Below, one piece after another: positions 9,824 to 43,557 of a stretch of 64,000 nt of DNA. Where the stretch lies: contig NW_027362767.1 in NCBI RefSeq assembly GCF_046119375.1, positions 146,692,001 to 146,756,000 of the forward strand, given 5' to 3'. Under the pieces are notes generated by a model. The model saw nothing but the letters and a program-made list of their open reading frames with translations. It was not told the DNA's origin and ran no database searches. Position 1 is the first letter of the stretch. Each line of letters begins with the position of its first letter. A program made the position numbers and the translations under genes. Source of the stretch: Phyllobates terribilis (lineage: Eukaryota).

Positions 9824-10076
9824 CCCCGCCCCTTCCGGTGACGTCATGATAGAATGAAATAACTCCTCCCCCTCAAGAAATCAACTCCAATCTAGACGCT
9901 ACCCTCGGTGTGCACGTCCTCCATGTTGTCGGGGTCTAACAGCAATGTGTTCCTACGGGAATGTCTCCTCTAAAACGGCGGCGTTACAGGAGGTCTGCTG
10001 TAGCGCGTAGTCGCAGGGCTGTATTACGGGAAGCCGAGGAGGCCGAGCAGACTCCGCTCTCCGGTGTGAGGTGAGG
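9824..10076 (+). promoter_or_regulatory. Candidate promoter (GC box + ETS + CRE) and putative non-coding first exon
   Basis: CCCCGCCCC (9824-32), CTTCCGG (9832-38) and TGACGTCA (9839-46) are adjacent. CpG-rich sequence follows, then a donor-like GAG|GTGAGG at 10070/71. It could splice to the acceptor at 13143/44. No transcript evidence. Confidence 0.4.
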
Positions 10077-13150: not shown

Positions 13151-14692
13151 ATGGCTGACAAGGACAAAGAGGGAGCCGTCGATAAGTGCCGTGTAAGTAC
13201 CGCAGCTACCCGGTGCTGCCCTCTCCTGGTGGCCTACATGTGGCCCCTGATATCTGCTGGGGTCCGGCCCTTATATACATCACTTCTACCTATCTCTGTA
13301 TTTTCCAGCTCTGCGACGCGCAGTTCACGAACAACAAGGAGAAAGACTCCCATTACAACGGGCAGTTCCACAAGTTCATGATGGTGAGCGACAGCCCAAA
13401 ATTTTCCCATCAGAAGACCCAATGTAAAAGCTTCTTCTCCCCTTTATTCCAAGTACCGGAAGTTTTTTTTTTTTTATTTTTCCATACGGGGGCTTGTTTT
13501 TTTTCTTGCGGGACGAGCTGTAATTTTGAATGTCGCCGTTCACTTTAACGTATCGCCTACTGAAAGATGAGGGGGAAAAAATCCTAGTAAAGTGAGCGAC
13601 TGCTCGTCCAGGAAACAAACAAGTCCTCACAGGGGAAAATTTACCAAAAAAAAAGTTACGGTTCCTGGAAGAAGAGGAGGAAATTCTTCTGGTCACGAAA
13701 GTGTTAAGTTTTCAGCACTTTTTTACTGATCCGATAATTCGGAAGGTTCGATAATCTGCCAGGTTGTTGGGTCTGTGCTGTATGAGGACAGTATGATTCC
13801 ACTTCATTACAGGGGGTGAGGCGAACACAGCTGTCTTATATGGGAAAGTCCAAGACGCTGAATGATCAGATCACAGAAACCGGCAAAAAGGAGTCTTTAA
13901 TCGGTAAGAAAGTCTGGAGCCCTCATTGCACACCATGGGGCTTGTGTACACTGCTATGGGGGCTTCCTGGGCATAACTGGGAGGGGGCGGTGTGACACCT
14001 GATGGCTTCTCTTGTGTGCAACCACCACTACATCCAACTTTGGGTCTTGGCAGCCGGAACCCAGCGATAAGTCATTTATCATCAACGATGATGTCATGTC
14101 GACAGCTCACAACACCGCTGCAGCCAATCACTGAGCTTAGTAGCTCCTTCAGTTATGAGGGTATTTACAGAGCAGTGTGTAAGGTATAACTTGTGGGGAG
14201 ATGATGGCTACATGTAATATTGTGGTGGATTTATTTTGTCAGGCCTCGAGTACATCTATGAGTATGCGGAGGATAGCCAAGGGGTCCGCATGTACGAATG
14301 CAAACTGTGCCAATCCGCCTTCAGAGTCGCCTCCATCTTCTTCCACATTGTGGGGATCCGGCACCGGGTTTATTACCTGGTAAGTACGAGCGGCACGGAC
14401 TCCTCACGAAGGAGTGTACCAGCGGTGTTCCCATCTGATGCCACCGATCCTGGGCATTTGTGCAGTAATCCCTGGTGCCCCTGCCCCTGACCTCTGCACT
14501 GAGTCGTGTCCAACTCCTTATGACTCCAGTTTCTGTTTGTGGAGTTATTTTGTTTTTTTTTGCTTTCAGGCGAAGCATCATCCCATTATGGGGATCGAGG
14601 ACAGTTACGAAGTCCAACAACAAGTTCATTACCGAAAATTAACCAATCACGCCCTCGCCATCGAGCAGACGCACGGAAGGAAGAAAATCAAT
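13151..14692 (+). CDS. N-terminal zinc-finger region (exons 1-5)
   Basis: Finger 1 is [23 protein letters not shown] (C-x2-C-x12-H-x5-H). Then [46 protein letters not shown] (C-x2-C-x11-H-x5-H) and [10 protein letters not shown]. From memory the GLEY..YxCxLC..H..H..YL..HP..AxxIE pattern resembles Drosophila CG7065 / zebrafish si:ch211-13c6.2-type proteins; not verified. Confidence 0.85.
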
Positions 14693-16165
14693 GTAAGCCA
14701 CACGTCTTAAAGGGGATGTCCATGGGTTGTGCTCCTGTAACTAGAATTCTGCAATACCAGATATCACTTCAGGAAATTGGTGACATTTTTGTCAACTTTA
14801 GTAATGTGTTTGCTGGTACAGGACAGTACTTCTGCAATAGTATTAGGCGTTTATAAAAGTACTGAGAAGCAGGCCTGGGGGGTTTCCTTAAGCCCCCAAT
14901 TACTCTGGCAACCCATTAGGCTTATGGGGTGACAGAGGGAGCCATGTTTCTCTGAGTAACTGCTTAGATGCCATGGCAGCTATTCACTGCAGCATTTAAG
15001 GGGTTAAGTCGTGACAATCTGAGTCCTCTCCAATCCCGGCAGCTGCATGATGGTGTCTGCTGTAAATGGAGGGGGCTTAACCATTATCCCTGCTATCAGG
15101 AAGGGGTTAACAAACATGCATAGATTGCAGTGTGGTTTGGGCAGGATGGAGGATGTCTCATACCTTGTATGTGTTTATTTTTACATTTAGGTCGTGGAGG
15201 AAGTTTACGCATCGAAGCCGAACGTCTCTGAAGTCAGTGATATGGAAATGTATCTTGTGGGTACGTTAACCACCCGGGGGAGGAAAGAATGGTCTTAGGA
15301 GAAGCACTCCCTCATGGTGAAACCTCCTGATATGTTATGTACAGTGGCTTGCGAAAGTATTCACCTCCCTTGGCTTTTTACCTGTTACATTACATACTAT
15401 GTTTTAAATATTTTTGTAACCCGTTTTGTGTGATGCATCAGCATTAGTCTAAGTTGGTGAAGTGAGAAAAATATAGGCATAAATTACATTTATGGGATCA
15501 AATAACTAAAAATTGCAGAGCTGTGGAGTCAGTAAGCCAAACCTCCGACTCCTCAATTTCCATGACACTGACTCCCTCATACCCTGGTCATGTGTAAGTG
15601 ATAAATTTACAGCAGCACAGATTCATCTCAGCTAAAAGTTCAGACCCTTAGATCAGGAATAGGACAGACATTTATAGGACATTTCAGAACTTTCCCAAAT
15701 TCTTATGAAAAAATATTCCCCACAAACTGCATTGAACTACTGAACCCAATTTATTATATATTTTACGAGTCGGTTGACTCCACAGCCCTGAAAAATTGCC
15801 ATGTGCATATGTATTCACCCCTTTGCTATGGAGCCCTTAAAGCTTTCCGGTGCAATCAATTCCCTTCATAAGTCCCATGCTTAGTGACAGAACATCACCT
15901 GTGTGCAATCTAAGTGTCACATGTCTGTCAGTATATACACTTTACCTTTTCTGAAAGGCCACAGAGGCTGCAACACCATTAACAAGAGGCACCACTAACC
16001 AAACACCATGAAGACCAAGGAGATCTCCAAACAACACCATGAAGACCAAGGAGATCTCCAAACACCATGAAGACCAAGGAGATCTCCAAACAACACCATG
16101 AAGACCAAGGAGATCTCCAACCAAATCAGGGACAAAGTTGTTGAGAAGTACAAGTCAGGGTTGGG

Positions 16166-16197
<32 letters not shown>

Positions 16198-19100
16198 TGT
16201 CCCAATCTCTGATGATTCCCCCCCCCCCCCCCCCCCTCCCCCAGAAAGCACCAACCAATCCATTATCATCAAATGGAAAGAACATGGTACCACAACAAAC
16301 CAGCCAAGAGAGGGCACCACCAAAACTCAACCCCGGCAAGTAGGGCACGAATCAGAGAGGTAGCACAGAGACCAAAGGTAACCCCGAAAGAGCTGCAGAG
16401 TTCCCAAGCAGGGACTGGAGTATCTGTCCATACAACCACAATAAGCGGTACACGGTAGAGGTGACCTTTTTGGAAGAGTGAGCTGAAAAAAGCCTTTACT
16501 TGCACACAAATTGTAAGGCTCGTTTTGAGTTTACCAAAAGACATTTGGGACACTCCCAAAATGTATGGATCAAGGTGCTGTGGTCAGATGAGGCCAAAAT
16601 TTAACTTTTCAGCCACCAAGGTAAACGTTATTCATCACCCCAAGAACACCATTTTTAGGTAGCATTGACAGGGAAATTAGTTGAGTTGAGGGGAAGATGG
16701 ATGGTGCGAAACACAGGGACTTTCTTGAGTAAAACCTGTTTCAGTCTGTCAGTGATTTGAGACTGGGAAGTAGGTTCATCCTCCAAGACAATGACCCAAA
16801 ACATACTGCAAAAGTAGCACTCGAGTGGTTTAAGGGGAAACATATAAATGTTTTGCAGTGGTCGAGTCACAGCCCAGACCTTAATCCAATGGAGAATCTG
16901 TGGTCAGACTTGAAGATTGCTGTTCACCAGAGGAAACGTCTAACTTGAAGGAGCTGGAGAAGTTTTTTTTCTTGTGGAATGGGCAAAAATCCCAGTGGCA
17001 AGAAGTGGAAAGCTCATAGAGACTTATCCAAAGCGACTTGCAGACACAAAAGGAGGATCTACAAAGTACTGACTTTAGGGGGGTGAATAGTTATGCACAC
17101 TGAAGTTTTCTTTTGTCCTAATTGTTGTTTGCTTCACGATAAAAAGAAAACTAAAAATAAATAAATAAAATGTTCACAGTTGTCGGCATGTTCTTTACAT
17201 GAACTGATGCAAACCCTTAAAAAAATGCTAATGCAAGCCACTGTATATGATGCTTTAACCCCTTTACACCTCATGACATAGACCTCTATCATGGAGCGGT
17301 CCTCCTCCTTGCTCCTGGATTCTTGGGTGCTGATGGGTTGCCATGACATTCGGGGGCTGCTGAAGCCCACCCCATCACCCTTCTCTGCGATCTACATACT
17401 CCGGTGAAGCATAATTTGTACTATATACTGTAATACCAGTGTTGTAGAATACAGTTAAAAGGATCAATTGACCTCAGGTTCTCATCCTTACTGCAGACGA
17501 ATGAAACGCTGTTGATTACATAGGATGTTGCTGGGACAGTGCCACACCTGTCAGTGTGAGGTATTGCAGCTCAGCTCTAGTGAATTGAATGGAGCACAAT
17601 TGCAATAACCGCAAAACTGGTGTGGTGCAGTTTATGGAAGCAGTTATGTTTTTTTTTTTTTTTTTTTTTGTTTTTTTTTTAATGCTGTACAATCCTTAAA
17701 TCTCACAGACAATATTCCCTCTAAAAAAGAACCGGAAAAGAAAAAAGATGAAAAAAAAGAAGAAAAGGATGACAGCAAGGAGAATAGTAGATCAAGAAGA
17801 GCCCGGGACCGAGCAGAGAAGTATAGAGAGCTGCTAAAAACTCGAGAGCGAGATGCTGATCGTGACGATCGATCCAGGCGTCGTGACCGCGATTCCTCAT
17901 CTCGGCGTGACAGTAAAGACCTGCCGAAATCTCTGCTTCATGAGGACGATTTTGACGCCAGGAACATAAGTCAGGGCAGTAGCTCTGCATCTCGACTCAA
18001 CTTACTGAAAGATTCCTCCGCTGCTGACTCCAGATCAGATCGTAGGAAGCGGACCCGTTCTCCAGATCGCCGCAGTAAGGCGCATAGTAGTCAAAGATCC
18101 AGATACTTAGAGAGCTCTGGCGATATTGACGTGCGGTCCGTGTTGCCCTCGGGGGGCATCTCCTTTCGAGGTAAGCTCATCTGCTTTCTGAAATGTTTCT
18201 GTAAGTGGCCACTGGTCTCTGACGTTCTGTACATACTTGGTCACTATCTACTTTACTGATTACATGTATCCTTATAGAACTGAAGGCAGCCAACATAGGA
18301 CATCTATGCGGATTCAGGTTAGTGATGAGGATATGACATCAATGCAGGATGCTTCTGTTAACAATGTGCTAGGTTTACACATGGCTACAACTATTGGGCT
18401 TAGTGCAGTATTTGGTCTACATTTGTGGAGCCTGCATGTAATGCAGTGCAGTTCAGGCTGCTCGATCCTGTCTTGTCCTCTTTTCTTAGCTTAGTACATC
18501 ATCTGAATATACCATAAATGTCTGATGGGCTCAGGTGCCAGTAGCATTTTGCTTCCTGGTGCTGAAAATGGCAAGATTGCATTGAAAACGCAGCTCGGGG
18601 AGATAAGGATGCGCAGCAGGGGTCAAAAGAAAAGTGCCCATCCCACCTCTGGATCCCGCACTAATTTTAATAGTGGGCCCCATTTTGCTGCTGTGAATAG
18701 TTAGGTATCTCCTGTTCAGCTCCCTCCAATCACCTTTCTGAAAGTAGAAGAGCCATTTTCGATTTACCAAAAAAGCAAACTGATGGCCCAGCGCATGCGC
18801 TTCTCTAAGTGCTCACTTACAAGCCGTGAGGTGGGGACCACGAGACATCCCTTCATGGTAAAACTGCCCATCTCGCCTGTCTTGAGCATGGGGCCCCCAG
18901 TGCATGCGCAGCTCTCTCCATTCACTTCAACAGCGCATGTGCAGCAGCGTCTGTCCGGTCGGTCCACTTCCTTTGTAGGCATGGGGCCCCCCCATCTGGG
19001 ACCCATAACCCTCTGGAGAATGGGGCCCTGGGTTGAATGTAGAAATGGTTGTGCATGTGTTGCTCTTTCCATTCACCTCTGGAAATTCGGAAAATAAAAA

Positions 19101-22100
19101 GAGGAGTGAATGTACCCATGTGCAATGGATTAACCCTTTAATGTCATAACAACTCTCCCTAAGGCCACAGCCCCCACTATCAGTATTCGGTCAGTATTTT
19201 TTCTCAGGGATGGGAGCCAAAACCAGGAGTGGTTGATAAATGCAGAATTGGTGACTTGTTTCTATTATACCTTTTCTCTGATTGTTCCTCACCTGGTTTT
19301 GGCTCCCACTCCTGAGAAAAAATACTGACCAAATAGTGATAGTGGGGCCGTGGCCTAATATACAGCTCTGTTTAGAGGCAGCTGACATAATGCTTCCCCA
19401 TATAATGTATAAAATACTCATGGAGTTATTTCTTTTACAGCAGCGCCCATCTGCCCCTGAGTAAAAAGAAGAAGAAGACAGTAAGCGTCCAGGAGAAATC
19501 CTAAATAAACCACCAAAGCGGCGACACGTTCACCTTATTATTTGTTTTTCAGGACAAGGACAAGGACTCCGACAGCGATATGGAAGTGTGCAGCATGGTA
19601 TGTGACTGACGGCTGTACGGTATATGAAAGCCGACCTGTGTGTGTGTATAATATATATATATAAGCTGGTTTATATGTCGCCACAGTGTGACGTTTCTAA
19701 TATTTTCCTACAGGACTTCAGCGAATGTGAACCGGACGATTTCTGGTGTAACGAGGAGCTGTTTGATTTCCTGGTAAGGCCTCACCTTATATGAAGAGAT
19801 GCTGAGCTCTTTTATGCTAAAAATAAAGTTCAAAGTGAAAAAAAAAAAAAAAAAGTTTTTAAATGTTTAAAATAAAAAGCTCTTGTTATTGCCACCCTTC
19901 CATTATTTAAAAAATAAAGAAAAACAAACTTAATTTTTCATTTTACATCATTATATGGTAAAATGATTGTTGTCATTCGAGACTATAACTCGTCCTGCAA
20001 AAAGAAAAAAAAAAATCTCTGGAATGCGATGTCTGCTGAAAAATAACAAAGTTATGGGTCTTGGAATAGGTGGAGGAAGCACAAAAGCAAAAACTGTCCA
20101 CGGTTCTAGTACAGAAGTGCGGAGATTTATCTTCTGATTTTTCTTTCTCTTAGAAATGCTACCACGTCGGAGATGAAGAAGACGTCCAGTTCATCCTGGA
20201 GGCCATAAAGACCTTGTCTCATGCTTTGGTCCGTCACAAGACGCGGATGGAGGATCTGAAGAAGTGGATAGAGCAGGAGAAGCAGAAGCTGGAAGATGAG
20301 AAGAAGGTATTCTGTCCTGTGTGACCATCTCTGCACTTCCTGAATAGGGGGCCGGTCCTGTATAGCTGGTGCACCTCCCTCATCGCTCCTCACCGGCTTC
20401 ACGAGTAGCTGCAAGATCAATGTATGGTGGGTTGGGGCCCCCATCGATCAGCATTACAAAGGGCACCATATGGATGTGACCGTGCCTGGTGCCACCGCTC
20501 AACGCTGATGTAATACCAAGCATTGCCATAGCTAGATGTTGGGGCTGTGGCTAAAGCTTTGGGTCCCCAGTGCTAGCCTATAAGCCCAGGACAGCCCCGT
20601 TTCCTGCACTGAGGCACTTAAAGAAGTATTCCAGTGTACAAAACTTGTTCACTGGACAGGTAATAACTGTTCAGTCGGTGACAGATCCCCACAGATCGTC
20701 AGTACCATGGAGCCAGATGTCTCTTGGTTCTCCTCTGTCCCTGGAGGAGCTGAATGGAGCTGCTGGTCACACACGTGGTCCTGTATAACCACCTGTCTTC
20801 TATATTCTAGAAATTTCAAGAAATGAAGAAGCGGAAAGAAGATAAGATATCCAGCACAAAGATCAGCGGTAAGTACAGAGACTGGGCCCAGCGGGAGAGA
20901 CGCATGTTATAAGGGTGACTACGTTGCCAGAAAACTTGAGACCTTGCACAATCAAAAATAGGAGCGTTAAAGCGAACCTGTCATCAGGATTGTGCTAAGT
21001 AAACTACAGGCAGTGTTAGGTTGCCGCCGTTACACTGATTAAAATGATACCTGAGTTGATGAAATCCGTCCTGTGGTCGTTGTTTAATCTTTGATTGCGG
21101 TTTGGAAATAATTAGATTCTAGTGCTCCGGGGCGGCCTGTGGCGGGGCTTTATGTGGTGCTCTGGCATTATCTTCATCATTGTGATTTAAATGACAGGTC
21201 ACTGATCCTTCACTGACCTGCCTACTATGTTAAATACTGCTCTGTTCATATTGTAGTTTTTTATTTTATTTTATTTTTTTATTTAACTCCCACAAAATGG
21301 CGCATGTGCAGTAGCATGTATCACTTGCCGAAAGAGGCTACTGCGCATGCGCTGCCGCCATTTTGCTGGAGCCAAATTTATTTTTTTTTGCTCCAACATG
21401 CTGTTATTCTCCGCGAGCCCCGCCCGTTTGCCGATAGATGTAACTGCGCATGCGCCATTTTGCTGGAATTAAATTTTATTACTCTGTCGCCTCATTGGGG
21501 GACACAGGACGTTGGGTGTATGCTGCTGTCCACTAGGAGGCGACACTATGCATAATCTGAAAAAGATTAACTGTGGCTCCTCCCCTGCAGCATACACCCC
21601 TAGACGGCGTCAGCCATCTTCAGTTTTTGCTTAGTGTCGCAAGGAGGCACACCTCAGACCTTCACTCGTCCCTCGCTTCAGCACGGGATTACAGATGAAG
21701 AAAAGAGGGTCTCTTAAGAGACCCCCGGCATGGCTCCTTCCTCTGCCCCCTACTATGGGGTGCACAGTTGAAGTTGAGGTGGCGTAACCACCATGCTGCT
21801 CCTTCTCCGGCCCCTCGGGTCAAGCTCGAAGCTGAGAACCCCCCCCTCCTTCCCCAATTCCCTCGGTCTTGGTCCGAAGTTGAGGCGAGGACAAAGCCCC
21901 CTGACGGTGACAGCGGCACCCTCCCTAATCCCCCCTGGGGGTATTAGGTTGAGACACCATCAGGTAGGGCCTGGACGGCAGCATCTGCAGCTCTCACCAG
22001 CCAGCACACCGCAGCCGAGGACCAGCAGCAATACAGGAGCCCCAGTCTGTCTGTGGGATCCTGTAGGAGCTGGGGTGAGTGCAGGCAGCCATGGCACACA

Positions 22101-31100: not shown

Positions 31101-34100
31101 TTTCTGTTTCTCTTCTCATCCGTAGCCCCTGCTAATCATCCTAACCCAACACCCAGTCCTCAGTTTAACATCAGGGCTCCTGTGGGAGGAACCGGACCGG
31201 TCCAAGGAGCAGGTAATTGTATAATTATCCCCAGACCATAGAGTGTACATGCCAGTGTGACATTTATATACCGTCTCTTTATCTACAGTCACAGCATCTA
31301 CTACCTACCCAAGTAAGAATCCGCAGATCCCTGGCCCCAGATTTGATAATCCAAATCCCTCTAAGGAACAGCGGCCTCTCCCAGGACAAGGAGCCGGCAG
31401 GTATCCAGGTATGCTGCATCACGCTATTCCGAGGGCCGCGGTAGGAAGGGGTTCTTACTTCACCGCCCCCTGGTGTGCGTCAGTAGTTCTACCCTGCAGC
31501 TGACAAGGATGTTCCAGTAACATGCGGATTATGTTTTGGCAGCAGAGAACGTCGGCCCGTCCCATCCTGTGCCCGGTTACCAGCAGTTGCCGGGGTCCAG
31601 TACTGCACCAGTCCAACAAGCCGGTCCGGGAGCTCCAGGTAATTATCGTAGTAATGGTCTCAGATGGTTGCAATTGTAAGATCCAGTTTTGTAAATTGAA
31701 ATCCTCCCCCCTCCCTCATTACGATGCAGAGCTGCCGCTGCAGCGGCCCCTCTTGGACTTGGCCGGCAGGTTACATAATTTTTTATAAATGGCTGAGAAT
31801 GAGTTGGAAAAAAAAGATAAAGAAGTGATCCCCTCACCTACTGCCTGAGTCTGCCTGGACACACCAATACTGACCCATGTACATTTACGAGGATTACATC
31901 TGCTGTCATCTTTATAACAAATCTTGATGTTTTTGTTTTTTTTCCAGGCCCTACAACGCGTTATGCTCAGAATCCAGAGATTCCCGGGTCAAGATTTACT
32001 AATCAGGACCCCTCTAAGGAACGAAGACCTCCTTTTTTGGGACAAGTACCTGGTGGATATCCAGGTAATCTCACATCATGACTATTAATTCACACTAGCG
32101 ATGATGCTAGAACAGTTTGTAGGATCACAATATTGATTAGTGGAGTCAGATGTATGCTTCGCCTGTCTTCTGGGCATTATGCGGTACGCCCACTATTCCC
32201 TACACCTGACAGAGCAGGACCCCCCGATGACTGCCTTATGCCCTAGTAGGAGGTACAGACAGGTGGTCCAGTTGGACAATCTCTTGGTCTCATATTCTGC
32301 ACTTTGCTGATACCTCTTGCTCCCCCTAGTGGGTGACAATGGTAATACACCACTACGTACAGGAATCGTTTCCACATGTAGTTTTATTTCTGCAATTTGA
32401 CAGTAACATCAATCTCTTTATACACTTCCAGCTCCCATGAATCCCAGCCAGCCTCAACAACAAGCTGCTCCAAGCCCTCAAGGTAGCATTATATTATAAT
32501 GGTAGCAGACTAGTAATGGTGCCATTGTAAAGTGACGTGCCGCCCCCTGATGTGTAAGGGGCAGGACCCCCACAGCTTTTCTAGTCTGCCACATATTAAC
32601 TGTATACATGTTGCACCTGCATTGGACATTGTATATATTTTTCCTCCATAGACGCTTCTATTCGCTTTAACCAAAATCCGCGTTCCGGCTTTGACAGGGG
32701 ACCTGTGGATGGAGCAGGAGCAGGTACGGTGGAAGGAACGACCACTGCTCCATTAATTTCCTGAGGGGCTGCCTGATAAAGTGCAGCGCTGTACTGCTCT
32801 CATCAATGCCTTAGATAGTCCATTCAGAAGGGGGATCTGAGAGCGCTGTCTTTGTGATCGGTTGGGTCCCTGTAGTCCGACCCCAGCCATCACCTGTCTT
32901 AGGTTGTGCATTGTTATAGTGGGCCATCCCTTTAAGGTGCTATGGTGTTTGTGTCTATTGCAGAATATGGCTGCAGCCATCCATTCCCATGCACACGTAG
33001 AAGTATGTCACGTCCTCCCATCGTCTCGTAACTTCTGTGTTTTTGTGGTGCAGGTTCTGAAACGCGCTTCAGTCAAAATCAGGGACCTCCTGCATCCAGG
33101 TTTGATAATACGAATCCCCCAAAGGACCCCAAGTCTCTGATGGGACAAGCAGCGAGCAGATATCCAGGTATCCATGGTGGGTGGGGATAGATGCTCCCCA
33201 TTTGTACCACAGGGATGGTGATGATATGTGATCGGCCTCTGTTATAATTCTGTCATTCTTCGATTAGAGTCGGAGGGTCGTTATAACCAGGATGACCTGT
33301 ATTCCGGTAGCTGGACTGACAACTCGGGAGCTCGCAATAAGGCAGGACCACCATTAGGAGCAGGTGATTACTGATAGTCGCGGTCAGGACATGCCAGATG
33401 ATCCGGTATATCTCATGGTCGTATTTGGGATCTGTATTCCCATCATACTGTGCCTCCATATTGTGGTATGTCGTTATGGTGGCATATGTAGAGTATACAT
33501 GTAGCCATACACCTGACTCTTACTTTTATTAAAATCGCTTGGATGCTGCAGTAAATGCCGACTATAGCATGTAAGGGTGTTAAACAACCAAGTGACGGCA
33601 TCTGCACGGCTCTGCTGCATCATCGCTTAAACTACCTCACAAAGTGCAACATAGTCTCCGATTGGCTATTTTATTTGGACACCTGCATAGTTGGCTACTA
33701 AATATAGTGGGTGACCATATGGCCAAGCAGGGTGACGGTGAACAGCAGCCAACAATGTGCAGGGTTTTTCTGGCACCACTGTTATTACGTCTTACTGGTG
33801 TGGCAGTGCTTGGACCTCCGCTGATGGGAACATCACTCCTATAACTCCTGCCGCGTGAGAACGTCACATGCGCCCGTATTTTTTCCTCCATAGACGCTGC
33901 CAATCGTTTTAACCAAAATCCGCCTTCCCGCTTTGATGCCAGGGGACCTGTGGATGGTGCAGGAGCCGGACCAGGTATGTGTGTATATCTATCGATAGAT
34001 AGGTAATCCGTGATAGATATATATACATACATGAAGACAGCACTCCTCTTTAGAAAAAAATCAAATAAGTGATTTTAATGGCCCATAAGGGCTAAATGTG

Positions 34101-37100: not shown

Positions 37101-40100
37101 ATTTCTTAAAGTAATGATGGCCACTCGTTTTTCTTTACTTAGCTGCTTTTTTCTTGCCATAATACAAATTCTAACAGTCTATTCAGTAGGACTATCAGCT
37201 GTGTATCCACCTGACTTCTGCACAACACAACTGATGGTCCCAACCCCATTTATAAGGCAAGAAATCCCACTTATTAACCTGACAGGGCACACCTGTGAAG
37301 TGAAGACCATTTCCGGTGACTACATCTTGAAGCTCATCAAGAGAATGCCAAGAGTGTGCAAAGCAGTCATCAAAGCAAAAGGTGGCTACTTTGAAGAACC
37401 TGGAATATAAGACATATTTTCAGTTGTTTCACACTTTTTTGTTAAGTATATAATTCCACATGTGTTAATTCATAGTTTTGATGCCTTCAGTGTGAATGTA
37501 CAAATTTCATAGTCATGAAAATACAGAAAAATCTTTAAATGAGAAGGTGTGTCCAAACTTTTGGTCTGTACTGTAGGTCACAGATGTATGGAGGAGACAG
37601 GTTGTGGATGGCTTTGTATGGCAAGGTTAGGGTTTTGAACTGGAGTCTCTGGGCAATGGGGAGCCAGTGAAGGGATTGACAGAGAGGAGAAGCGGGGAGT
37701 AGCGGGGGGACAGGTGGATTAGTCGAGCAGCAGAGTTTAGGATAGATTGGAGGGGTGCAAGAGTGTTAGAGGGGAGGCCACAAAGCAGGAGGTTGCAGTA
37801 GTCAAGGCGGGAGGTGATGAGGGCAGCACTAGTGTTTTTGCAGATTCATGGTTGAGGAATGTGCAGATCCAGGAGATATTTTTGAGTCCGAGTCGGCAGG
37901 AAGTGGAAAGGGCTTGGATATGTGGTTTGAAGGAGAGATCAGAGTCCAGGGTTACCCCGAGGCACCGAGCTTGTGGGACTGGGGAGAGTGAACAGCCATT
38001 GACGTTGATAAATAGGTCAGATGGGGGGGTTGAGTGAGACGGTGGAAAGATGATGAATTCAGTTTTATCCATGTTAAGTTTTAGAAATCTGTCAGAGAAG
38101 AAGGATGAAATAGCGGACAGACATTGTGGGATTCTGGTTAGTAAGGAGGAGATATCTGGTCCAGAGAGGTAGATCTGTGTGTCATCAGGATAGAGGTGAT
38201 ACTGAAAGCCATGAGACTCTATGAGCTGTCCCAGGCCGAAGGTGTAGATGGAGAAGAGCAGGGGTCCTAGAACTGAACCTTGGGGGACACCGACAGATAG
38301 TGGACGAGATGAGGAGGTGGTGTGTGAGTGGGAGACACTGAATGTCTGGTCTGTTAAATATAAGGAGATCCAAGATAGGGCCAAGTCTTTGATGATGAGA
38401 GTCAGTAGTAAGAGGGAATGGTCCACTGTGTCAAAGGCATTTGACAGGTCCAGGAGGAGGAGGACAGAGTAGTGTCACTTGGATTTGGTAGTTAGTAGGC
38501 CGTTGGTGACTTTAGTCAGGGCAGTTTCAGTGGAGTGATGCGGTCGGAAGCCAGATTATAAGCGGTCAAATAGGGAGCAGGAGGAGAGGTGGGAGGACAG
38601 TTCAAAATGGACATGTTCCAGCAGTTTTGAGGCGTAAGGAAGAAGTGATATGGGGCTATAGCTAGACGGAGAGGATGGGTCCAGGGGACGGCTTTTTGAG
38701 GATGGGTGTGATCGAGGCATGTTTGAAGCATGAGGGGAAGACACCGGTTGTTAGTGACAGGTTGAAAAGGTGGGTTAGGATTGGGATGAAGACTATGATG
38801 AGGTTAGGGATGAGGTGGGACGGGATTGGGTCAAGTTTCCAGGTGGTGGTGTGATTTGGAGAGTAAAGAGGAAAGTTGATTGTCCGTAATGGTGGAGAAG
38901 CTGGTTTTGGAGGAGGAGGGTTGAGTAGATATGAGGAGGGGCTGTGGGGACTTTAGGCAAAAGCTTTGTCCGATGGTGTCAATCTTCTGCTTGAAGAATG
39001 ATGCAAAGTCTTAGGCTGAGATGAGATAATAATGATTAATTGAAATTTTTGTTTCCGGAATCAGGATGTGCAAAAACATTTACCTTTCAAAAGATTAGTA
39101 CAATTAACACAATTTAGGCAAGGATAACACCCAGTCCTTTTTGCTCCTGTCAATGATGATGGTTTCAAACTCTTAAGAGGTCCTAGATCCGCATGTACAA
39201 GCCTGTCCGTAAAATTCCTAGCACGTTTAAATGAAAATAGTGGAGGATTACTATAATGTGTAACTTCAGGGATACAATTGTCTAACATTTGCCAATGCTT
39301 TTTAATAGTTCAAGCAGTTTTGCCACTCTTTTCACAATATGTCGTACATACTGGTATCCTGTTTAATGCCCTATTCCTATCAGGCCCAGCCGCCAAAAGA
39401 CTTCCACAATCTAAGGCGTTGACTTTATCTTCCCATTTTTTCAGGAGTTTTTTTTGTATAGTTCCTCTGTAAAAATTTCTAAATGATAATTTTATAATTT
39501 TGCTTTAACAGTGTCTCATCACTTACAATTCTTTTAATTCGGAGTAACTGGCTGTAAGGCAACGATTCAATCATTTTTTTTTTACTCGAAATTGAACCAG
39601 AGTACATTTTGTAGCATCATCATCCATATGGTTTAAAAACTCATGAAACAGATTCAGTTCAAGAGTTGTACCAGTCCACAGGAGGAAGACGTCGTCTATG
39701 TATCGCCACCACCTGAGCACATGGGCAAAGTGGGGTGACACATAGACGAGGGCCTCCTCCAACATGGACATCATTAAATTGGCATAAGCTGGTGCTATAC
39801 TGGCACCCATTGCTGTTCCGCGGCTTTGGACATAATAATCACTACCAAAAAGAAAGTAATTATTATTAAGTAATAACTCAAGTAGTTCAATAATAAAGTC
39901 TATACTTTTCAATGTATATTCCACATGCGTAAGCTTTTTGCTGACAGCCAAAATGCCTCTATTATGTTGGATAGAAGCATACAATGATACCACATCGATC
40001 GAGAGAACGTCACATGCTCCTGTATTTTTTTCCTCCATAGACACTGCCAATCGTTTTAACCAAAATCCGCCTCCCCGCTTTGATGCCAGGGGGGGACCTG

Positions 40101-43100
40101 TGGAGGGTGCACGAGCCGGACCAGGTATGTGTGTCTCTCTATCTATCTATATAGATGTGTGCGTACATGTTAGATTAATATAGGCCTACCCCACCCGAAC
40201 CATCTGAATATGGGGATGACCTCATTGCTTGTTGTGGTCCCTCTGTACCTCCTTGTGCCCCCAATGTGGTATAAGGTATTGGCATCACTGTAGACCTAGA
40301 GTTGCTGTATAGGCTGCATGGATGTTTCGGAGCCTCGTCTACTGTCGCTTTAATATTTTTCTACAGGTCCCATAACGCATTTCAGTCAGACTCAGCAAGT
40401 TCCTGTCTCCAGATTTGACCACCCGAATGCCTCTAAGGATCAGAGGTCTATCGTCGGGCAAACAGCGGGCAGATATCTAGGTATCTCACACATATCTGAG
40501 ATTTTTATTAGCCATATCCTTAAAGGCTTGGTGCCAACTTGGATGGGTGATAACTTATTGCTCGCTGGCGGTCTGGCCACTGGGACACAATCTCTTACTG
40601 CGCAGTCGGTGATTATATATGATTACTGTGAGACTTGACCGGCCTTGGTTATGATTTTATCATTTTTCACGTGCAGAGTCGGATGGTCGTTACAGCCAGA
40701 ATGAGCCGTATCCCGGGTCCCGAACTGACAACAATGGATCCTACGATAACACAAGACCACCATTAGGAGCAGGTAATTACTGACTGTTAGGATTGAAGAC
40801 CAAGGGTTTTTCACTGGCTAGCTGGGTCCTTTAAAAATAATCTGATCACATAGTGTCCCTGGTTTTCCTAGTGATCAGCTGTAATCTGTGGATAAACGTG
40901 GCAGTGTTAAAAATCCCTGCAGCGCCTGCAGAGGGGAAATGAAGTATTACAGTTTTCATTCATATCAATGAACTTTCCGCGTAATGTAGGACAGGAAGTG
41001 TCGTCAGGAGCGAGACACGTACCAAGAGATGATGAACAGAGGACCCCTTCTGTTAACTCAATCTGTGTTTTTGTTTTTGTACAGGCTCTGAGATGCGTTT
41101 CAGTCAGAATTCGCAAAGTTCTGCTTCTAGATTTGACAATCCAAATCCTGGTAATCAACAAAAATCCTTCATGGGACAAGAAGCAGACAGATATTCAGGT
41201 ATCCGGATTCACAGCAACACTGCTCAGTACTGCATTTTCCAAAGAATTGGTGGGGATGGTGGCGCTGAAATGGCTGTGAAGTCTAATGGTGCAGGGTATA
41301 GCACTTGGAGTGGCGGGGGTGAGGCGCAGCAACGAACAATATCCATGGTACAGCAATAGATCAGGGAGATATAAAAACATTTAGAGGTTCATGTTGGTGC
41401 GCTGACAGAACAGTTAGTGAGGATGCGGTAACTAAAAATAAATGCCTTCTTATTTTAGGGTTTTCAAAAATCACTGAGGTCAGATTCCAATTTTGGGAAT
41501 GGGTTATAAGTGATCTTTTTATAATATTTTCCTTCAGAGAGAAAAGATGTTTATTTTTAATTACCACATCCTCACTAATTCTACTGGCAGCGCACCAACA
41601 TAACCTTTAATGTTTTCAATACTGCGTTATAATATATTCCATGCTGTTGCTGTTTTTTATTAAGTGTTTTATCGCACCCGAGTGATGGAGTCACAGCTAT
41701 ACTGCTCAATAATGTCCTCCATGCTGCTGTTTTCTAGTAAAAGCAGCAGCAGGTCTGGGCTCACAGTAACACTGCTCAGTACTGTTGTAGAACAAGTACC
41801 ATGACGATGTTACTTCTAAACAGGTGCTACGTAGAGACTGCAGAGCAGCTATGACTCAGGATATCTATAGCTAGCCTCCACCCACTAGCTCAGAGACAGC
41901 TATAATTCTTTCATTCTTTGTGTACAGAGGTGGACGATCATTATAACCAGGATGACTCGTATCCCGGTACCTGGACTGAAAACAGTGGATCCCTCGATAA
42001 GACACGAGCACCATTAGGACCAGGTGATTACTGACCATCAGGATCAGAGAACCGACAGATTTATTGCTTTAGTGGTCGTCAAGGACTTCAATACTGATAG
42101 CCAAGCTATAGTATAGGTCAGCTGTATCAGATTTATTGGGGTCCTACACCCGTAACCACCACTGATCTGTTACAAAGTCCTGCGGCTGTTGAATGTGCAC
42201 AGTGTAAAGAGCCGGATCACAACAGCGCCATACACTGTGTAGTGGCCGTTCACGGTACTGACATTTTAGCTTTTATTTACTTCAATACGAGCTGATCTTC
42301 AGTACCTGAATACAGCCACAATATGGCGAATACGAACTTACTTCCCCCCCTTACTTTTCCTTTTGCATGGAGCGTACTTTACAGTTTCCTTCCAGTAGCT
42401 GTGGAGCTTAGGATCAGCTGAGGGTGCCGAATATTAATGACCTATTCTAGTTTCAGGTCATAGATGTCCTAGTAAACCACTTTAAGCTAGAACCTCTACT
42501 TCCTGAATATGTTGCCCCTTTTCTGTATCTCCATGTTTATTGTGGTATGAAGCATCGCATGCTGTTGTGTTGCTTCCAAGTATAATGGGGGCAACATAGG
42601 ACGGCACAGGAAGTCCTACGCACCAGTAGCCCTTCGATGGAGGGATTGGGTCACTGTAGTGAAGTGATTCCAGGTAAACCTATCAGAAATCCATTGATCC
42701 ATCCGTGTAGGTCTATGGGCGATCCCCGACACCATTCCATATTGATGGACTGTGGCTGTATATATTTCCTTTGCTGGTGATATGACATGTAGTATGCTTT
42801 TATCTTCATAGATCAACGAAAGGATTATAAGCCGATGTCGTGGAATAGCGGACCACCGTCCGGAAACCAGGGCTTCTATAATGAGGCGCGACCAGTTACC
42901 GGGATGGGAACGGGAAGATATGACGGTATTATTAACATGTACTATTATTGTGTGCATGATTTAAGGCTTTGGTGTCCGTGTTATTCACTGTGGGTGGATT
43001 GTGGATATTGTGGGGTCTGTATGATGGTGGGAGACATATAAATAATCACTTACTTATTTTGTCACAGACCAGTACACCCAAAACCAGTATCAGTCCCAGT

Positions 43101-43557
43101 ACAGTAGCAGTGGGTCGTATGGGGCTGGAACGGACAGACCTCCTGGTATGTATCTGACTTATCAGATTTGCATGGGGAGAGGAGTAAGCTGCTGACACAA
43201 CCCTTCACTGTGGCCACTTTTCTTGCAATCTGTGCCACACTATTAATTAAACATCCCCAATGTCTTTGGTGGAAAAACTCCTTTAACTGCAGGAAAGATT
43301 TTGGGGTTTTGGATTAGGAGGTTCAGACATCACATGTGATAGGTTTTGTGTGATAATAAGTGATAGATTTATATTAGTTCTTAAGTCTTGTATTTCGTTA
43401 TTACTTTACAGGACCACAAGGTGGCCAGCCTCAGCCTGCTGCTTCTACCGGGTACCCATCAGACGGGCGTCCAGGCACATGGCCCAGCCAGGCTCCTGCT
43501 AAACGCGGCGTTTACCCTGCTGGCATCCTCAAAAACAGGACAGCCAATCCGCCCTAA
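13151..43557 (+). CDS. 35-exon host gene, ~1169 aa: two C2H2 (matrin/U1-like) zinc fingers, RS/RD-rich region, coiled coil, modular Pro/Gly/Gln/Asn low-complexity tail (uncharacterised)
   Basis: Coding exons deduced by hand: 13151-13192, 13309-13383, 13813-13903, 14243-14379, 14570-14692, 15191-15260, 17709-18170, 18278-18317, 19441-19480, 19553-19597, 19714-19773, 20154-20306, 20811-20868, 29230-29331, 29429-29479, 30327-30422, 30508-30597, 30686-30784, 31126-31212, 31289-31408, 31543-31638, 31948-32064, 32432-32482, 32652-32723, 33054-33167, 33268-33363, 33894-33974, 40041-40124, 40367-40480, 40677-40772, 41085-41198, 41928-42023, 42812-42925, 43068-43145, 43412-43557. All have a pyrimidine tract with AG acceptor and a GT donor. 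Phases match, and the total is 3510 nt with no internal stop. Confidence 0.88.
15342..17243 (+). mobile_element. Degenerate Tc1 element in intron 6
   Basis: TA|CAGTGGCTTGCGAAAGTATTCAC start and GCAAGCCACTG|TA end. Transposase remnants: [26 protein letters not shown] (16098), [22 protein letters not shown]. Many frameshifts. Confidence 0.88.
15516..15790. mobile_element. hAT-type MITE nested in the Tc1
   Basis: TIR CAGAGCTGTGGAGTCA / TGACTCCACAGCCCTG; exact 8-bp TSD AAAAATTG at 15508-15515 and 15791-15798. Confidence 0.9.
17709..18170 (+). CDS. Exon 7: K/E-rich then RS/RD-rich segment
   Basis: 462-nt phase 1-1 exon reading [65 protein letters not shown]; acceptor CACAG, donor GTAAGC. Confidence 0.9.
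19163..19355. mobile_element. ~190-bp palindromic MITE, copy 1
   Basis: GGCCAC.GCCCC.ACTATCAGTATT.. / ..AATAGTGATAGTGGGGCCGTGGCC with TAA on both flanks; homologous to 30104-30295. Confidence 0.85.
21793..24211 (+). pseudogene. DIRS ORF1 (gag-like), fragmented
   Basis: Position in the element; C-terminal fragment [40 protein letters not shown], typical of vertebrate DIRS ORF1. Confidence 0.7.
24200..25940 (+). pseudogene. DIRS reverse transcriptase / RNase H / methyltransferase-like ORF, frameshifted
   Basis: PPVGGRL start; [17 protein letters not shown]; [14 protein letters not shown]; PYLDDLL; RNase H motifs [19 protein letters not shown] and [15 protein letters not shown]; later YIFPP. 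The motifs lie in different frames. Confidence 0.93.
25928..27084 (+). pseudogene. DIRS tyrosine recombinase, frameshifted
   Basis: [17 protein letters not shown] and TFTKHY catalytic motifs; ORF split at ~26330. Confidence 0.93.
27860..29137 (-). mobile_element. Old degenerate Tc1 remnant
   Basis: Minus-strand fragment [36 protein letters not shown]; decayed TIR-like CTGCCTAAAACATTTCCACTGTGCTG near 29111-29137. Confidence 0.6.
29230..43145 (+). CDS. Array of 21 symmetric phase 1-1 exons (exons 14-34) encoding the low-complexity tail
   Basis: Exon lengths are 102, 51, 96, 90, 99, 87, 120, 96, 117, 51, 72, 114, 96, 81, 84, 114, 96, 114, 96, 114 and 78 nt. All are multiples of 3 and all end on the first base (G) of a codon. 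Confidence 0.88.
30104..30295. mobile_element. ~190-bp palindromic MITE, copy 2, inverted relative to 19163
   Basis: Same TIRs as copy 1; the central segment is the reverse complement of copy 1 (GGTATAATAGAAACAAGTCACCAATTCTGC). Confidence 0.85.
35947..37573 (-). mobile_element. Tc1-related DD38E (Intruder-type) transposon, full length
   Basis: TIR CAGTACAGACCAAAAGTTTGGACAC of ~270 bp with TA on both flanks. Confidence 0.95.
36108..37160 (-). CDS. Transposase, 350 aa, uninterrupted ORF, DD38E spacing, first catalytic Asp read as Glu
   Basis: Paired-like HTH, GRPR, WSEESK (normally WSDES), [17 protein letters not shown]; 38 residues between D and E. Confidence 0.92.
   Translation of the reverse strand: MARKKQLSKEKRVAIITLRNEGQSVRKIGKTLKVSPSAVAKTIKRYKETGSHEDRPRKGRPRVTSASEDKFIRVTSLRNRRLTAAQIRDQVNATQSSSSRHISTTTVKRRLCAAGLHGKIAARKPLLRTGNKQKRLVCAKEHKEWTLDQWKSVLWSEESKFEIFGSNHRVFVRHRKGERMDSTCLVPTVKHGGGGVMVWGCFAGDTVGDLFKIEGILNQHGYHSILQRHAIPSGLCLVGPSFIFQQDNDPKHTSRLCKGCLTKKESDRVLRQMTWPPQSPDLNPIEMVWGELDRRVKAKGSTSAKHLWELLQDCWKTISGDYLLKLIKRMPRVCKAVIKAKGGYFEEPRI

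What the first reader, a model, noticed from the sequence alone, without database searches (positions are those of the whole stretch)
13151..43557. Uncharacterised 35-exon gene combining matrin-type zinc fingers, an RS/RD domain and a prion-like tail
Seen: an open ~1169-codon frame across 35 exons that the ORF track does not show. It has two C-x2-C-x11/12-H-x5-H fingers, an RS/RD block, a KKKKK basic patch, an acidic stretch (DSDSDME..EELFDFL), a coiled-coil-like stretch ([29 protein letters not shown]) and a P/G/Q/N/aromatic tail. Established: matrin/U1 fingers and RS domains occur in RNA-processing and nuclear-speckle proteins; G/S/Y/Q/N-rich tails with Arg and aromatic residues drive condensation in FET-family proteins. 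Inference: an unstudied nuclear RNA-binding, condensate-forming protein, possibly of the CG7065 / si:ch211-13c6.2-like family. That family link is recalled, not searched.
Basis: partly seen in the sequence, partly recalled or inferred. Interest (0 to 1): 0.8.

Follow-up and report, generated by a model that had tools for sequence, protein, structure and literature searches.

The report
Frog zinc-finger RNA-binding gene with repeat tail
This is a real, spliced and expressed poison-frog gene, found only in "modern" frogs, that joins a ZFR-like double zinc-finger RNA-binding module to an Arg/Ser-rich stretch and a 700-residue floppy tail built from duplicated exons. Its function is untested, and its closest studied look-alike is a fly transposon-silencing cofactor.

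Summary
The 35-exon, 1169-codon reading (13151..43557, + strand) is identical to residues 40-1207 of an NCBI-predicted "uncharacterized protein" of Phyllobates terribilis. All introns are GT-AG. In the one stretch I could test, assembled contigs of four public runs from two studies join 13 of 13 introns.

The two fingers, the RS/RD exon, the KKKKK patch, the acidic stretch and the long helix are all present.

What it is: the fast-evolving "long" paralogue, seen only in neobatrachian frogs, of an unstudied vertebrate family. That family includes Xenopus LOC100486588, chicken LOC420992 and coelacanth "si:ch211-197h24.6". No mammal turned up.

- **N-terminal module:** it folds confidently and is homologous to the tandem U1/JAZ-type fingers of ZFR (hhalign 97.5%). 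Its best Swiss-Prot fold match is Drosophila CG7065, now called TEsup-2, a Piwi cofactor.
- **Tail:** 21 symmetric phase 1-1 exons encode a P/G/Q/N-rich stretch on the disordered side by hydropathy and charge, with evenly spaced Arg-aromatic pairs. Only its last part looks FUS-like.

Nuclear location, RNA binding and condensation remain inferences. The CG7065 link has structural support only, and si:ch211-13c6.2 could not be tested. This earlier scan also noted the tail and the duplicated exon on this same stretch. Interest is moderate.

The parts
9961..10070 (+). Exon 0: upstream first exon; in isoform X2 it encodes an Arg-rich 36-residue N-terminal extension, otherwise it is probably 5'UTR
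   Evidence: Exact mapping of P0002. Dendrobates and Ranitomeya orthologues start at the MAD... methionine instead. No RNA check was run here.
13144..13192 (+). Exon 1: conserved start ATG at 13151 (A at -3, G at +4); carries the first Cys of finger 1
13309..13383 (+). Exon 2: rest of finger 1 (C-x2-C-x12-H-x5-H), U1/JAZ type
   Evidence: Pfam zf-met 18.9 bits, below the cut-off of 21.2. The family profile hits ZFa and ZNF346/JAZ at E 2.6e-5 and 5.6e-5. Structural match to JAZ and to the TUT1 finger.
13813..13903 (+). Exon 3: helical linker between the two fingers
   Evidence: helices 33-49 and 55-62 of the model
14243..14379 (+). Exon 4: GLEYIYEY pre-finger strand plus finger 2 (C-x2-C-x11-H-x5-H), ZFR type
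14570..14692 (+). Exon 5: helix after finger 2 and the GRKKIN strand, inside the folded N-terminal module
15191..15260 (+). Exon 6: end of the N-terminal module, acidic linker
17709..18170 (+). Exon 7: 154-residue RS/RD/K-rich low-complexity exon
   Evidence: S 19%, R 19%, D 14%; disordered side of the Uversky plot
18278..18317 (+). Exon 8: small linker exon
19441..19480 (+). Exon 9: KKKKK basic patch, a candidate nuclear-localisation signal
19553..19597 (+). Exon 10: acidic [15 protein letters not shown] stretch
19714..19773 (+). Exon 11: family-invariant N-x2-LF motif (NEELFDFL), a short helix
20154..20306 (+). Exon 12: start of the 62-residue long helix (…[20 protein letters not shown])
   Evidence: pLDDT 90-95
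20811..20868 (+). Exon 13: end of the long helix, KKRKEDK basic patch
   Evidence: Its 3' end is read as the loose end joined to 29229/29230 in four runs.
29230..29331 (+). Exon 14: first of the 21 phase 1-1 tail exons
   Evidence: (RNA joint)
29429..29479 (+). Exon 15 (tail, Q/P/A-rich)
30327..30422 (+). Exon 16 (tail, P/Q/A/V-rich)
30508..30597 (+). Exon 17 (tail)
30686..30784 (+). Exon 18 (tail)
31126..31212 (+). Exon 19 (tail)
31289..31408 (+). Exon 20: class A repeat (…RFDNPNP…GRYP)
31546..31638 (+). Exon 21 (tail); the RNA contigs use the tandem acceptor at 31543, adding one codon
31948..32064 (+). Exon 22: class A repeat
32432..32482 (+). Exon 23 (tail, P/Q-rich)
32652..32723 (+). Exon 24: class C repeat (RFNQNP…[12 protein letters not shown])
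33054..33167 (+). Exon 25: class A repeat
33268..33363 (+). Exon 26: class B repeat (GRYNQDD…W/TDNSG…PPLGA)
33894..33974 (+). Exon 27: class C repeat
40041..40124 (+). Exon 28: class C repeat, 92% identical in DNA to exon 27 (a recent duplicate)
   Evidence: The contigs 'go back 81' with an inserted GGG, meaning the two copies stand in tandem in the mRNA.
40367..40480 (+). Exon 29: class A repeat
   Evidence: a loose end behind 33976 reads its start
40677..40772 (+). Exon 30: class B repeat
41085..41198 (+). Exon 31: class A repeat
41928..42023 (+). Exon 32: class B repeat
42812..42925 (+). Exon 33: degenerate class A repeat, conserved across hyloid frogs
43068..43145 (+). Exon 34: S/Y/G/Q-rich segment, the only FUS-like part; last phase 1-1 exon
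43412..43557 (+). Exon 35: conserved C-terminal peptide (…[16 protein letters not shown]) and the stop codon

Best explanation
The locus is a genuine, expressed protein-coding gene of Phyllobates terribilis. It is the 'long' paralogue, found only in neobatrachian frogs, of a conserved but unstudied vertebrate gene family that includes Xenopus LOC100486588, chicken LOC420992 and coelacanth si:ch211-197h24.6-like.

Shown here:
- The exon structure and splicing.
- A compact N-terminal module of two C-x2-C-x11/12-H-x5-H fingers, homologous to the tandem U1/JAZ-type fingers of ZFR.
- An RS/RD-rich exon.
- A conserved acidic stretch, a short NEELFDFL helix and a 62-residue helix.
- A 703-residue tail on the disordered side by hydropathy and charge, made of 21 duplicated phase 1-1 exons. 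Its composition and evenly spaced Arg-Phe/Tyr pairs are conserved across hyloid frogs, while its sequence and length are not.

Inferred mechanism:
- The finger module binds double-stranded or structured RNA, as ZFR, JAZ and ZFa fingers do.
- The basic patches and RS/RD region take the protein into the nucleus and to splicing or speckle factors in a phosphorylation-dependent way.
- The central helix recruits a protein partner.
- The tail supplies many weak Arg-aromatic and Pro-rich contacts.
- Together these would make the protein a multivalent scaffold on nuclear RNA.
For: - **Gene model:** 100% identity to P0002 over 36 GT-AG exons.
- **Splicing and expression:** 13 of 13 introns joined in contigs of four runs from two studies.
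- **Family and clade:**. In the tree, the LONG clade has 100/99 support on a long branch.
- **N-terminal module:** AlphaFold2 gives pLDDT 87.3 and pTM 0.82. hhalign of the family profile against a DZF-domain ZFR-like protein gives 97.5%, E 4.9e-12, over both fingers.
- **Finger 1:** profile matches to dsRNA-binding ZFa and JAZ at E about 1e-5. Structural matches to the JAZ, TUT1 and SF3A2/Prp11 fingers.
- **Central module:** conserved across the family and modelled as a short helix plus a 62-residue helix.
- **Tail:** composition P14 G11 Q10 A9 S8 N6 R6, on the disordered side of the Uversky plot. It has 45 aromatic residues with gap sd 6.3, against 10.7 in shuffles (0 of 2000 shuffles as even). 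Twenty of the 45 follow an Arg.
- **Conservation of the tail:** composition is conserved at 37-49% sequence identity, with length ranging 433-1034 aa across hyloids.
Against: - No experiment or localisation data exist for any vertebrate member. RNA binding, nuclear location, partner binding and condensation are all by analogy.
- Finger 2 is not recognised by Pfam, and finger 1 is below Pfam's cut-off in this protein.
- The even aromatic spacing follows automatically from exon duplication, so it does not by itself show selection.
- The homodimer test of the helix gave no verdict.
- The tissue of the RNA runs is unknown.
- The runs may be the same data NCBI used to build the model.
Confidence: 0.6

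Rival explanations
1. It is a vertebrate counterpart of the arthropod TEsup proteins (CG7065/TEsup-2, CG31510/TEsup-1). On this reading it is recruited to nascent transposon RNA and links it to nuclear exosome adaptors and heterochromatin formation.
For: - CG7065 (Q7YZA2, residues 17-131) is the top Swiss-Prot fold match of the N-terminal module: E 1.4e-3, probability 1.0, 23% identity. The next hit has E 0.077.
- AlphaFold cluster hits include dipteran proteins of 930-1100 aa and many other invertebrates at E 1e-8 to 1e-4.
- The order of parts is similar: a finger domain, a helical domain and an SR-rich region.
- TEsup fingers are also said to resemble those of DZF proteins, which agrees.
- The host genome is 10.6 Gb, and every large intron I scanned holds transposon ORFs.
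Against: - The similarity is structural only, covers one domain, and has TM 0.48.
- I could not obtain the fly sequences for a profile test.
- The TEsup paper reports restriction to Arthropoda.
- The central module is modelled as a helix hairpin, not the tri-helical proline-recognition domain, and has no match in solved structures.
- ZFR-type fingers are shared by several unrelated nuclear proteins.
Confidence: 0.15
2. Only the N-terminal module and central helix are functional. The tail is a neutrally drifting by-product of exon duplication with no role of its own.
For: - Tail length varies from 433 to 1034 aa and identity is only 37-49% among hyloids.
- Ranoid orthologues have almost no tail (15-118 aa).
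- The exon copies are old and diverged, at 54-80% DNA identity.
Against: - All 21 tail exons keep an open frame, phase 1-1 and good splice sites, and all those tested are included in the assembled contigs.
- Composition is held within narrow limits across families.
- The last 74 residues are 54-62% identical across hyloids, with a conserved end peptide.
- Ranoids carry an IDR of the same composition, 639-746 aa long, at another position.
Confidence: 0.12
3. It is a DNA-binding C2H2 transcription factor, or a structural collagen-like protein as one orthologue is labelled.
For: - The finger-2 exon also hits classical multi-finger C2H2 proteins.
- The Dendropsophus orthologue is named 'collagen alpha-1(I) chain-like'.
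Against: - Both fingers have H-x5-H spacing, and a long helical linker rather than a TGEKP linker separates them.
- None of the classical C2H2 pattern (H-x3-4-H) is present.
- The best profile matches are RNA-binding fingers.
- No collagen domain is reported by Pfam, so the collagen name probably rests on P/G-rich composition alone.
Confidence: 0.04
4. The reading is an annotation artefact or a pseudogene.
For: - Many exons are short and low in complexity.
- Introns are full of transposons carrying their own ORFs, including an RS-like ORF at 22958-23557.
Against: - The 3624-nt frame is uninterrupted across 36 canonical introns.
- Spliced contigs with exon-bin depth in the hundreds occur in two studies.
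- Orthologues occur in at least ten frog genera.
Confidence: 0.01

Closest known systems
ZFR / ZFR2 (zinc finger RNA-binding protein, DZF family)
   Same: - Tandem U1/JAZ-type fingers with C-x2-C-x11/12-H-x5-H spacing.
- The 'IG.EYI' strand before the second finger and the 'H..G..HR..Y.K..P' continuation after it.
- hhalign gives 97.5%, E 4.9e-12, to a DZF-bearing ZFR-like protein.
- ZFR2 is the second Swiss-Prot fold hit.
   Different: - There is no DZF domain.
- It has two fingers, where ZFR has three by my recollection (not checked here).
- It has an RS/RD exon, the NEELFDFL helix module and the exon-repeat tail, which I do not recall in ZFR (recalled, not compared here).
Drosophila TEsup-2 (CG7065) and TEsup-1 (CG31510), Piwi cofactors (bioRxiv 10.64898/2025.12.16.694471)
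   Same: - The finger domain is the best Swiss-Prot structural match.
- Both are large, mostly disordered proteins with an SR-type region and a helical domain after the fingers.
   Different: - I found no proline-recognition domain or third shared domain.
- Sequence-level homology was not tested.
- The TEsup family is reported as arthropod-only.
- The frog tail has no counterpart.
Vertebrate 'short-type' paralogues (Xenopus LOC100486588, chicken LOC420992, coelacanth si:ch211-197h24.6-like); uncharacterised
   Same: - The same N-terminal two-finger module, at 22-30% identity with all zinc ligands invariant.
- The same central N-x2-LF helix module.
   Different: - The short type ends in a conserved 'IAATNPAFRGI' helical module, which the window's protein lacks.
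- The short type has no RS/RD exon and no long exon-repeat tail.
- The long clade sits on a long branch.
ZNF346/JAZ and Xenopus dsRBP-ZFa (dsRNA-binding zinc fingers)
   Same: The finger 1 profile matches both at E about 1e-5. It superposes on the JAZ finger at rmsd 2.4 Å over 44 residues.
   Different: JAZ and ZFa are arrays of similar fingers with no other domains (from general knowledge). Here the two fingers pack into one globular module with extra helices and strands.
FET-family low-complexity domains (FUS/EWS/TAF15)
   Same: Exon 34 (S/Y/G/Q-rich) and the evenly spaced aromatic residues paired with Arg resemble the sticker-and-spacer pattern.
   Different: - The tail has Pro 14% and Q+N 16%.
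- Aromatic residues make up 7% of the tail; FET domains are about 15% Tyr (a figure recalled, not measured here).
- Pfam reports no RRM or RanBP2 finger; RGG boxes were not looked for.
- It is not a FET family member.

Membership tests
ZFR / DZF-family RNA-binding proteins | Tandem U1-like fingers (C-x2-C-x11/12-H-x5-H) with the conserved pre-finger strand | tested here: met
   hhalign of A1 against P0255 (Pfam DZF + zf-met + jaz): 97.5%, E 4.9e-12, 126 columns spanning both fingers. phmmer E 1.3e-4 in a database of 5.8 billion sequences.
ZFR / DZF-family RNA-binding proteins | C-terminal DZF domain (PF07528) | tested here: not met
   The Pfam scan of P0002 finds only a weak zf-met match.
TEsup (CG7065/CG31510) | Shared U1-like zinc-finger domain | tested here: inconclusive
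   Foldseek top Swiss-Prot hit Q7YZA2 [17-131]: E 1.4e-3, TM 0.48 by query, 23% identity. No sequence-profile test was possible because the fly sequence was not obtainable.
TEsup (CG7065/CG31510) | Tri-helical proline-recognition domain with aromatic tandem motifs | tested here: inconclusive
   The central module is modelled as a short helix plus one 62-residue helix. Neither a sequence profile nor Foldseek found a solved structure like it.
TEsup (CG7065/CG31510) | Third shared structured domain (TEsup-2 596-698) | not tested
   No reference sequence or model was available to the tools.
TEsup (CG7065/CG31510) | SR-rich region (TEsup-2 only) | tested here: met
   Exon 7 has S 19%, R 19% and 14 RS/SR dipeptides. 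This is low-complexity sequence, so it shows analogy rather than homology.
Vertebrate LOC100486588 / LOC420992 / si:ch211-197h24.6-like family | N-terminal two-finger module | tested here: met
   Alignment A1 has 16 invariant columns, including all eight zinc ligands. Supported by HMMER hits and the tree.
Vertebrate LOC100486588 / LOC420992 / si:ch211-197h24.6-like family | Central N-x2-LF helix module | tested here: met
   Alignment A2 has N33, L36 and F37 invariant across frogs and the coelacanth. The motif is also visible in bird, turtle, caecilian and lungfish sequences.
Vertebrate LOC100486588 / LOC420992 / si:ch211-197h24.6-like family | C-terminal 'IAATNPAFRGI' module | tested here: not met
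   Present in all nine short-type proteins aligned. Absent from P0002 and its long-type orthologues, which end in …ILKNRTxNPP.
Matrin/U1-type zinc finger (Pfam zf-met PF12874) | Score above Pfam's gathering cut-off | tested here: inconclusive
   Finger 1 scores 15.1-18.9 bits against a cut-off of 21.2 in this protein. The Xenopus and coelacanth relatives pass at 22.1 and 21.6 bits. Finger 2 is not detected.
Classical SR proteins | RRM plus RS domain | tested here: not met
   Pfam finds no RRM. Only the RS/RD region is present.
FET family (FUS/EWS/TAF15) | SYGQ low-complexity domain plus RRM, RGG boxes and a RanBP2 finger | tested here: not met
   There is no RRM or RanBP2 finger. The tail composition differs, with only exon 34 being SYGQ-like.

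The most novel reading that the evidence does not exclude
The vertebrate two-finger family, including this expanded frog paralogue, may be the missing vertebrate relative of the arthropod TEsup proteins. On this reading its ZFR-like finger module sits on nascent transposon RNA. The central aromatic helix module and the Pro-rich, Arg-aromatic tail would then recruit nuclear exosome adaptors or silencing factors multivalently. The long paralogue would have expanded its tail in frogs with very large, transposon-laden genomes.
Probability: 0.12. Interest if true: 0.8.

Novelty: new variant of a known kind. Interest (0 to 1): 0.42.

Why it matters
- **An unstudied family with a first mechanistic lead.** This gives a clade-restricted, expressed frog gene and its wider vertebrate family a testable foothold. 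The family is present in fish, amphibians and sauropsids, and no mammal was seen. The lead is a ZFR-type dsRNA-binding finger module.
- **A possible TEsup relative outside arthropods.** The finger module's nearest studied structural match is the fly transposon-silencing cofactor TEsup-2. If that link holds at the sequence level, TEsup-like proteins are not confined to arthropods.
- **A natural experiment on disordered regions.** The tail is a 700-residue stretch on the disordered side by hydropathy and charge, assembled from 21 symmetric exons. Its composition and sticker spacing are conserved while its sequence, its length and even its position in the protein change between frog families.

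Tried and rejected
- **Whole N-terminal module against solved structures.** Foldseek and VIA-align wide gave no fold match beyond the single finger 1.
- **Central module against solved structures.** The only sequence-profile match was the 'C.EELFDFLH' of cytochrome bc1 subunit 6 at E 0.035. I take this as chance, because the cysteines are not conserved in the family. Foldseek found nothing.
- **Short-type C-terminal module against solved structures.** Nothing meaningful.
- **Homodimer prediction of residues 420-510.** No verdict, score 0.02. This counts neither for nor against pairing.
- **Bridging to the fly proteins by sequence.** The word-based searches returned no arthropod protein.
- **Papers.** I found none on LOC100486588. 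si:ch211-197h24.6 and si:ch211-13c6.2 each appear once, in a QTL paper and in a gene list.
- **The RS-like ORF at 22958-23557.** I rejected it as part of the gene. It lies in intron 13, upstream of a retroelement RT/RNase H ORF, and the mRNA skips it.
- **The donor at 13383 joined directly to 14243.** This is out of phase. Exon 13813-13903 lies between them.

Full report
**Observation.** The window is vertebrate DNA full of transposons.

Reading the DNA around the first exons shows an ATG at 13151 in good context. A GT donor follows 14 codons later, and the next exon completes a C-x2-C-x12-H-x5-H finger. A second exon encodes GLEYIYEY followed by a C-x2-C-x11-H-x5-H finger.

An exhaustive HMMER search with that exon found P0002, a 1207-aa protein identical over the exon. 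NCBI calls it "uncharacterized protein isoform X2 [Phyllobates terribilis]".

Exact spliced mapping places P0002 on the window at 100% identity in 36 exons, all with GT..AG introns. Exon 0 (9961-10070) adds an upstream start in this isoform. The Dendrobates and Ranitomeya orthologues start at the same MAD… methionine.

**Transcription.** Public runs of the same organism hold 22-44% of the sampled words of two test stretches. That is roughly what exon-only coverage would give.

Laying four runs from two studies on 29150-34100 shows contigs of 1.1-2.2 kb that join all 13 introns with GT..AG ends. Twelve joints fall at the model's positions. One uses a tandem acceptor 3 nt upstream (31543 against 31546).

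Exon bins have k-mer depth in the hundreds, and several pure-intron bins read 0. One intronic repeat bin is far deeper. A loose end before 29229 spells the end of exon 13, so the 8.3-kb transposon-filled intron is removed. A "goes back 81 with GGG inserted" joint shows the near-identical exons 27 and 28 standing in tandem in the mRNA.

The runs are not on record as RNA, but intron-less GT..AG joints can only come from spliced RNA.

**Anatomy.** The protein has five parts.

- **Residues 40-218 (exons 1-6)** form one compact module. AlphaFold2 with a 20-sequence family alignment gives pLDDT 87.3 and pTM 0.82.
- **Exon 7** encodes 154 residues with S 19%, R 19% and D 14%.
- **Exons 9-13** encode a KKKKK patch, an acidic stretch, the family-invariant N-x2-LF motif as a short helix, and a 62-residue helix at pLDDT 90-95.
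- **Exons 14-34**, 21 in all, are every one phase 1-1 with lengths divisible by three.
- **The tail**, exons 14-35 together, is 703 residues: P14 G11 Q10 A9 S8 N6 R6, on the disordered side of the charge-hydropathy plot.

Three exon classes recur in the tail in the order C-A-B. Copies are 54-80% identical in DNA, except exons 27 and 28 at 92%.

The 45 aromatic residues of 680-1207 are spaced more evenly than in any of 2000 shuffles, and 20 of them follow an Arg. That regularity follows from duplication and is not by itself evidence of selection.

**Family.** Full-length relatives of this protein were found only in neobatrachian frogs. The genera are Dendrobates, Ranitomeya, Eleutherodactylus, Bufo, Dendropsophus, Rhinoderma, Leptodactylus, Rana, Aquarana, Mantella and Mixophyes.

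A shorter paralogue type shares the finger module and the central helix module but ends in a different conserved module, "IAATNPAFRGI". It occurs in Xenopus (LOC100486588), Ascaphus, pelobatoids, neobatrachians, a caecilian, turtles, an alligator, lizards, many birds (chicken LOC420992), lungfish and coelacanth. NCBI names the coelacanth protein after zebrafish si:ch211-197h24.6.

No mammal appeared among 113 hits. This is evidence of absence or strong divergence, not proof.

A maximum-likelihood tree of the N-terminal module puts the long proteins in one clade with 100/99 support on a long branch. If the tree is rooted on the lobe-finned fishes, that clade lies among the anuran sequences. This suggests a duplication within frogs followed by fast change, but the deeper nodes are weak at 82-85.

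The host genome also holds the short paralogue on another contig, and a third match.

Across hyloids the tail keeps its composition while identity is 37-49% and length ranges 433-1034 aa. In ranoids, a disordered stretch of the same composition sits instead between the fingers and the central helix. The last 74 residues are better conserved, at 54-62%.

**What the fingers are.** Pfam sees finger 1 only below its cut-off in this protein, though the relatives pass, and it misses finger 2.

The family profile matches the dsRNA-binding fingers of Xenopus ZFa and human ZNF346/JAZ at E 2.6e-5 and 5.6e-5. Finger 1 superposes on the JAZ, TUT1 and SF3A2/Prp11 fingers.

A search from the lungfish protein reached a ZFR-like flatworm protein bearing a DZF domain. 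Profile comparison of the frog family with that protein gives 97.5% probability and E 4.9e-12 across both fingers, including the pre-finger strand.

So the module is homologous to the ZFR finger pair. The protein has no DZF domain, so it is not a ZFR.

**The CG7065 lead.**

Among 550,129 Swiss-Prot models, the best match of the N-terminal module is Drosophila CG7065, residues 17-131. The values are E 1.4e-3, probability 1.0 and 23% identity over 115 residues. The next hit is ZFR2 at E 0.077. The cluster library adds annelid, brachiopod, mite, spider, nematode and dipteran proteins at E 1e-8 to 1e-4.

CG7065 was described in December 2025 as TEsup-2. It is a nuclear cofactor of Piwi-guided transposon silencing whose paralogue recruits exosome adaptors through a helical proline-recognition domain. 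The authors note that its fingers resemble those of DZF proteins, and they state that the family is restricted to arthropods.

I could not obtain the fly sequences. I found no counterpart of the proline-recognition domain: the central module is a helix hairpin with no match among solved structures. The link therefore stands as a one-domain structural resemblance, and membership is not shown.

**Mechanism.**

- *Shown:* gene structure, splicing, domain homology, composition and conservation pattern.
- *Inferred from ZFR, JAZ and ZFa, from RS-domain proteins and from sticker-and-spacer low-complexity domains:* the protein binds structured or double-stranded RNA in the nucleus, is directed by its basic and RS/RD regions, and uses the helix and the multivalent tail to gather partners.
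- *Less likely, about 0.15:* a TEsup-like role in transposon RNA decay or silencing.

"Prion-like" fits only exon 34. The bulk of the tail is too Pro-rich and too poor in Q/N.

**Verdict.** The gene model is already in public annotation, but neither it nor its family has been studied. It is a new variant of a known kind: a U1/ZFR-type finger protein with an RS region and a low-complexity tail. Interest is moderate.

Noticed in passing
window 31540-31546: Tandem (NAGNAG) acceptor. The RNA contigs of all four runs use 31543, whereas the NCBI isoform X2 model uses 31546. The result is one extra codon in the expressed form.
   Followed up: partly
window 33894-33974 and 40041-40124: Exons 27 and 28 are 92% identical, far above the 54-80% of the other repeat copies. 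The 6-kb intron between them holds a Tc1/mariner ORF and two reverse-transcriptase fragments. Both exons are in the mRNA.
   Followed up: partly
window 22958-27084: Intron 13 holds a retroelement with an RT/RNase H ORF (24058-25779) and further ORFs up to 27084. It is preceded by a 200-codon RS/RD-rich open frame (22958-23557) that mimics an RS domain but is not in the mRNA.
   Followed up: partly
window 36108-37160 (-) and 2118-3020 (+): Two Tc1/mariner transposase ORFs (HTH_Tnp_Tc3_2 + DDE_3). The one inside the gene's intron is an uninterrupted 350-codon ATG-to-stop frame.
   Followed up: partly
window 37737-38426 (-) and 39571-40050 (-): Reverse-transcriptase (RVT_1) fragments on the opposite strand, inside the intron between exons 27 and 28.
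   Followed up: partly
window 30146-30311: An intronic bin with k-mer depth of 24,000-86,000 in all four runs, with many loose ends and an opposite-strand joint. It is probably a very abundant transcribed repeat, not part of this gene.
   Followed up: no
window 8000-10000: A GC-rich stretch (0.55) with strong negative GC skew (-0.34), just upstream of and including exon 0. It is possibly the promoter or a CpG island. The long ORFs here (8742-9803) have no Pfam match.
   Followed up: no
window 43560-44470: Just after the stop codon lies a long CT-rich low-complexity stretch that is open in three frames (S/F/L/P-rich ORFs of 198-236 codons). It is probably 3'UTR simple sequence.
   Followed up: no
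window 47415-47629: A run of 215 N. By the operators' note such runs are assembly gaps or deliberate masking.
   Followed up: no
L003 (G000:C3:684012962-684013153): A third match to the finger module in the same genome, inside a 391-codon open frame with no stops. It is possibly a single-exon or retrocopied family member.
   Followed up: no
P0039, P0051 (Mantella, Rana orthologues): In ranoid frogs the repeat-rich disordered region (about 640-750 aa, of similar composition) lies between the finger module and the central helix instead of at the C-terminus. The same kind of expansion has therefore arisen at a different place in the protein.
   Followed up: partly
P0002 residues about 407-435 (window 19553-19773): The acidic stretch plus 'C.EELFDFL' resembles the cytochrome bc1 hinge protein (subunit 6) at E 0.035. 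I judge this chance, because the cysteines are not conserved in the family.
   Followed up: yes
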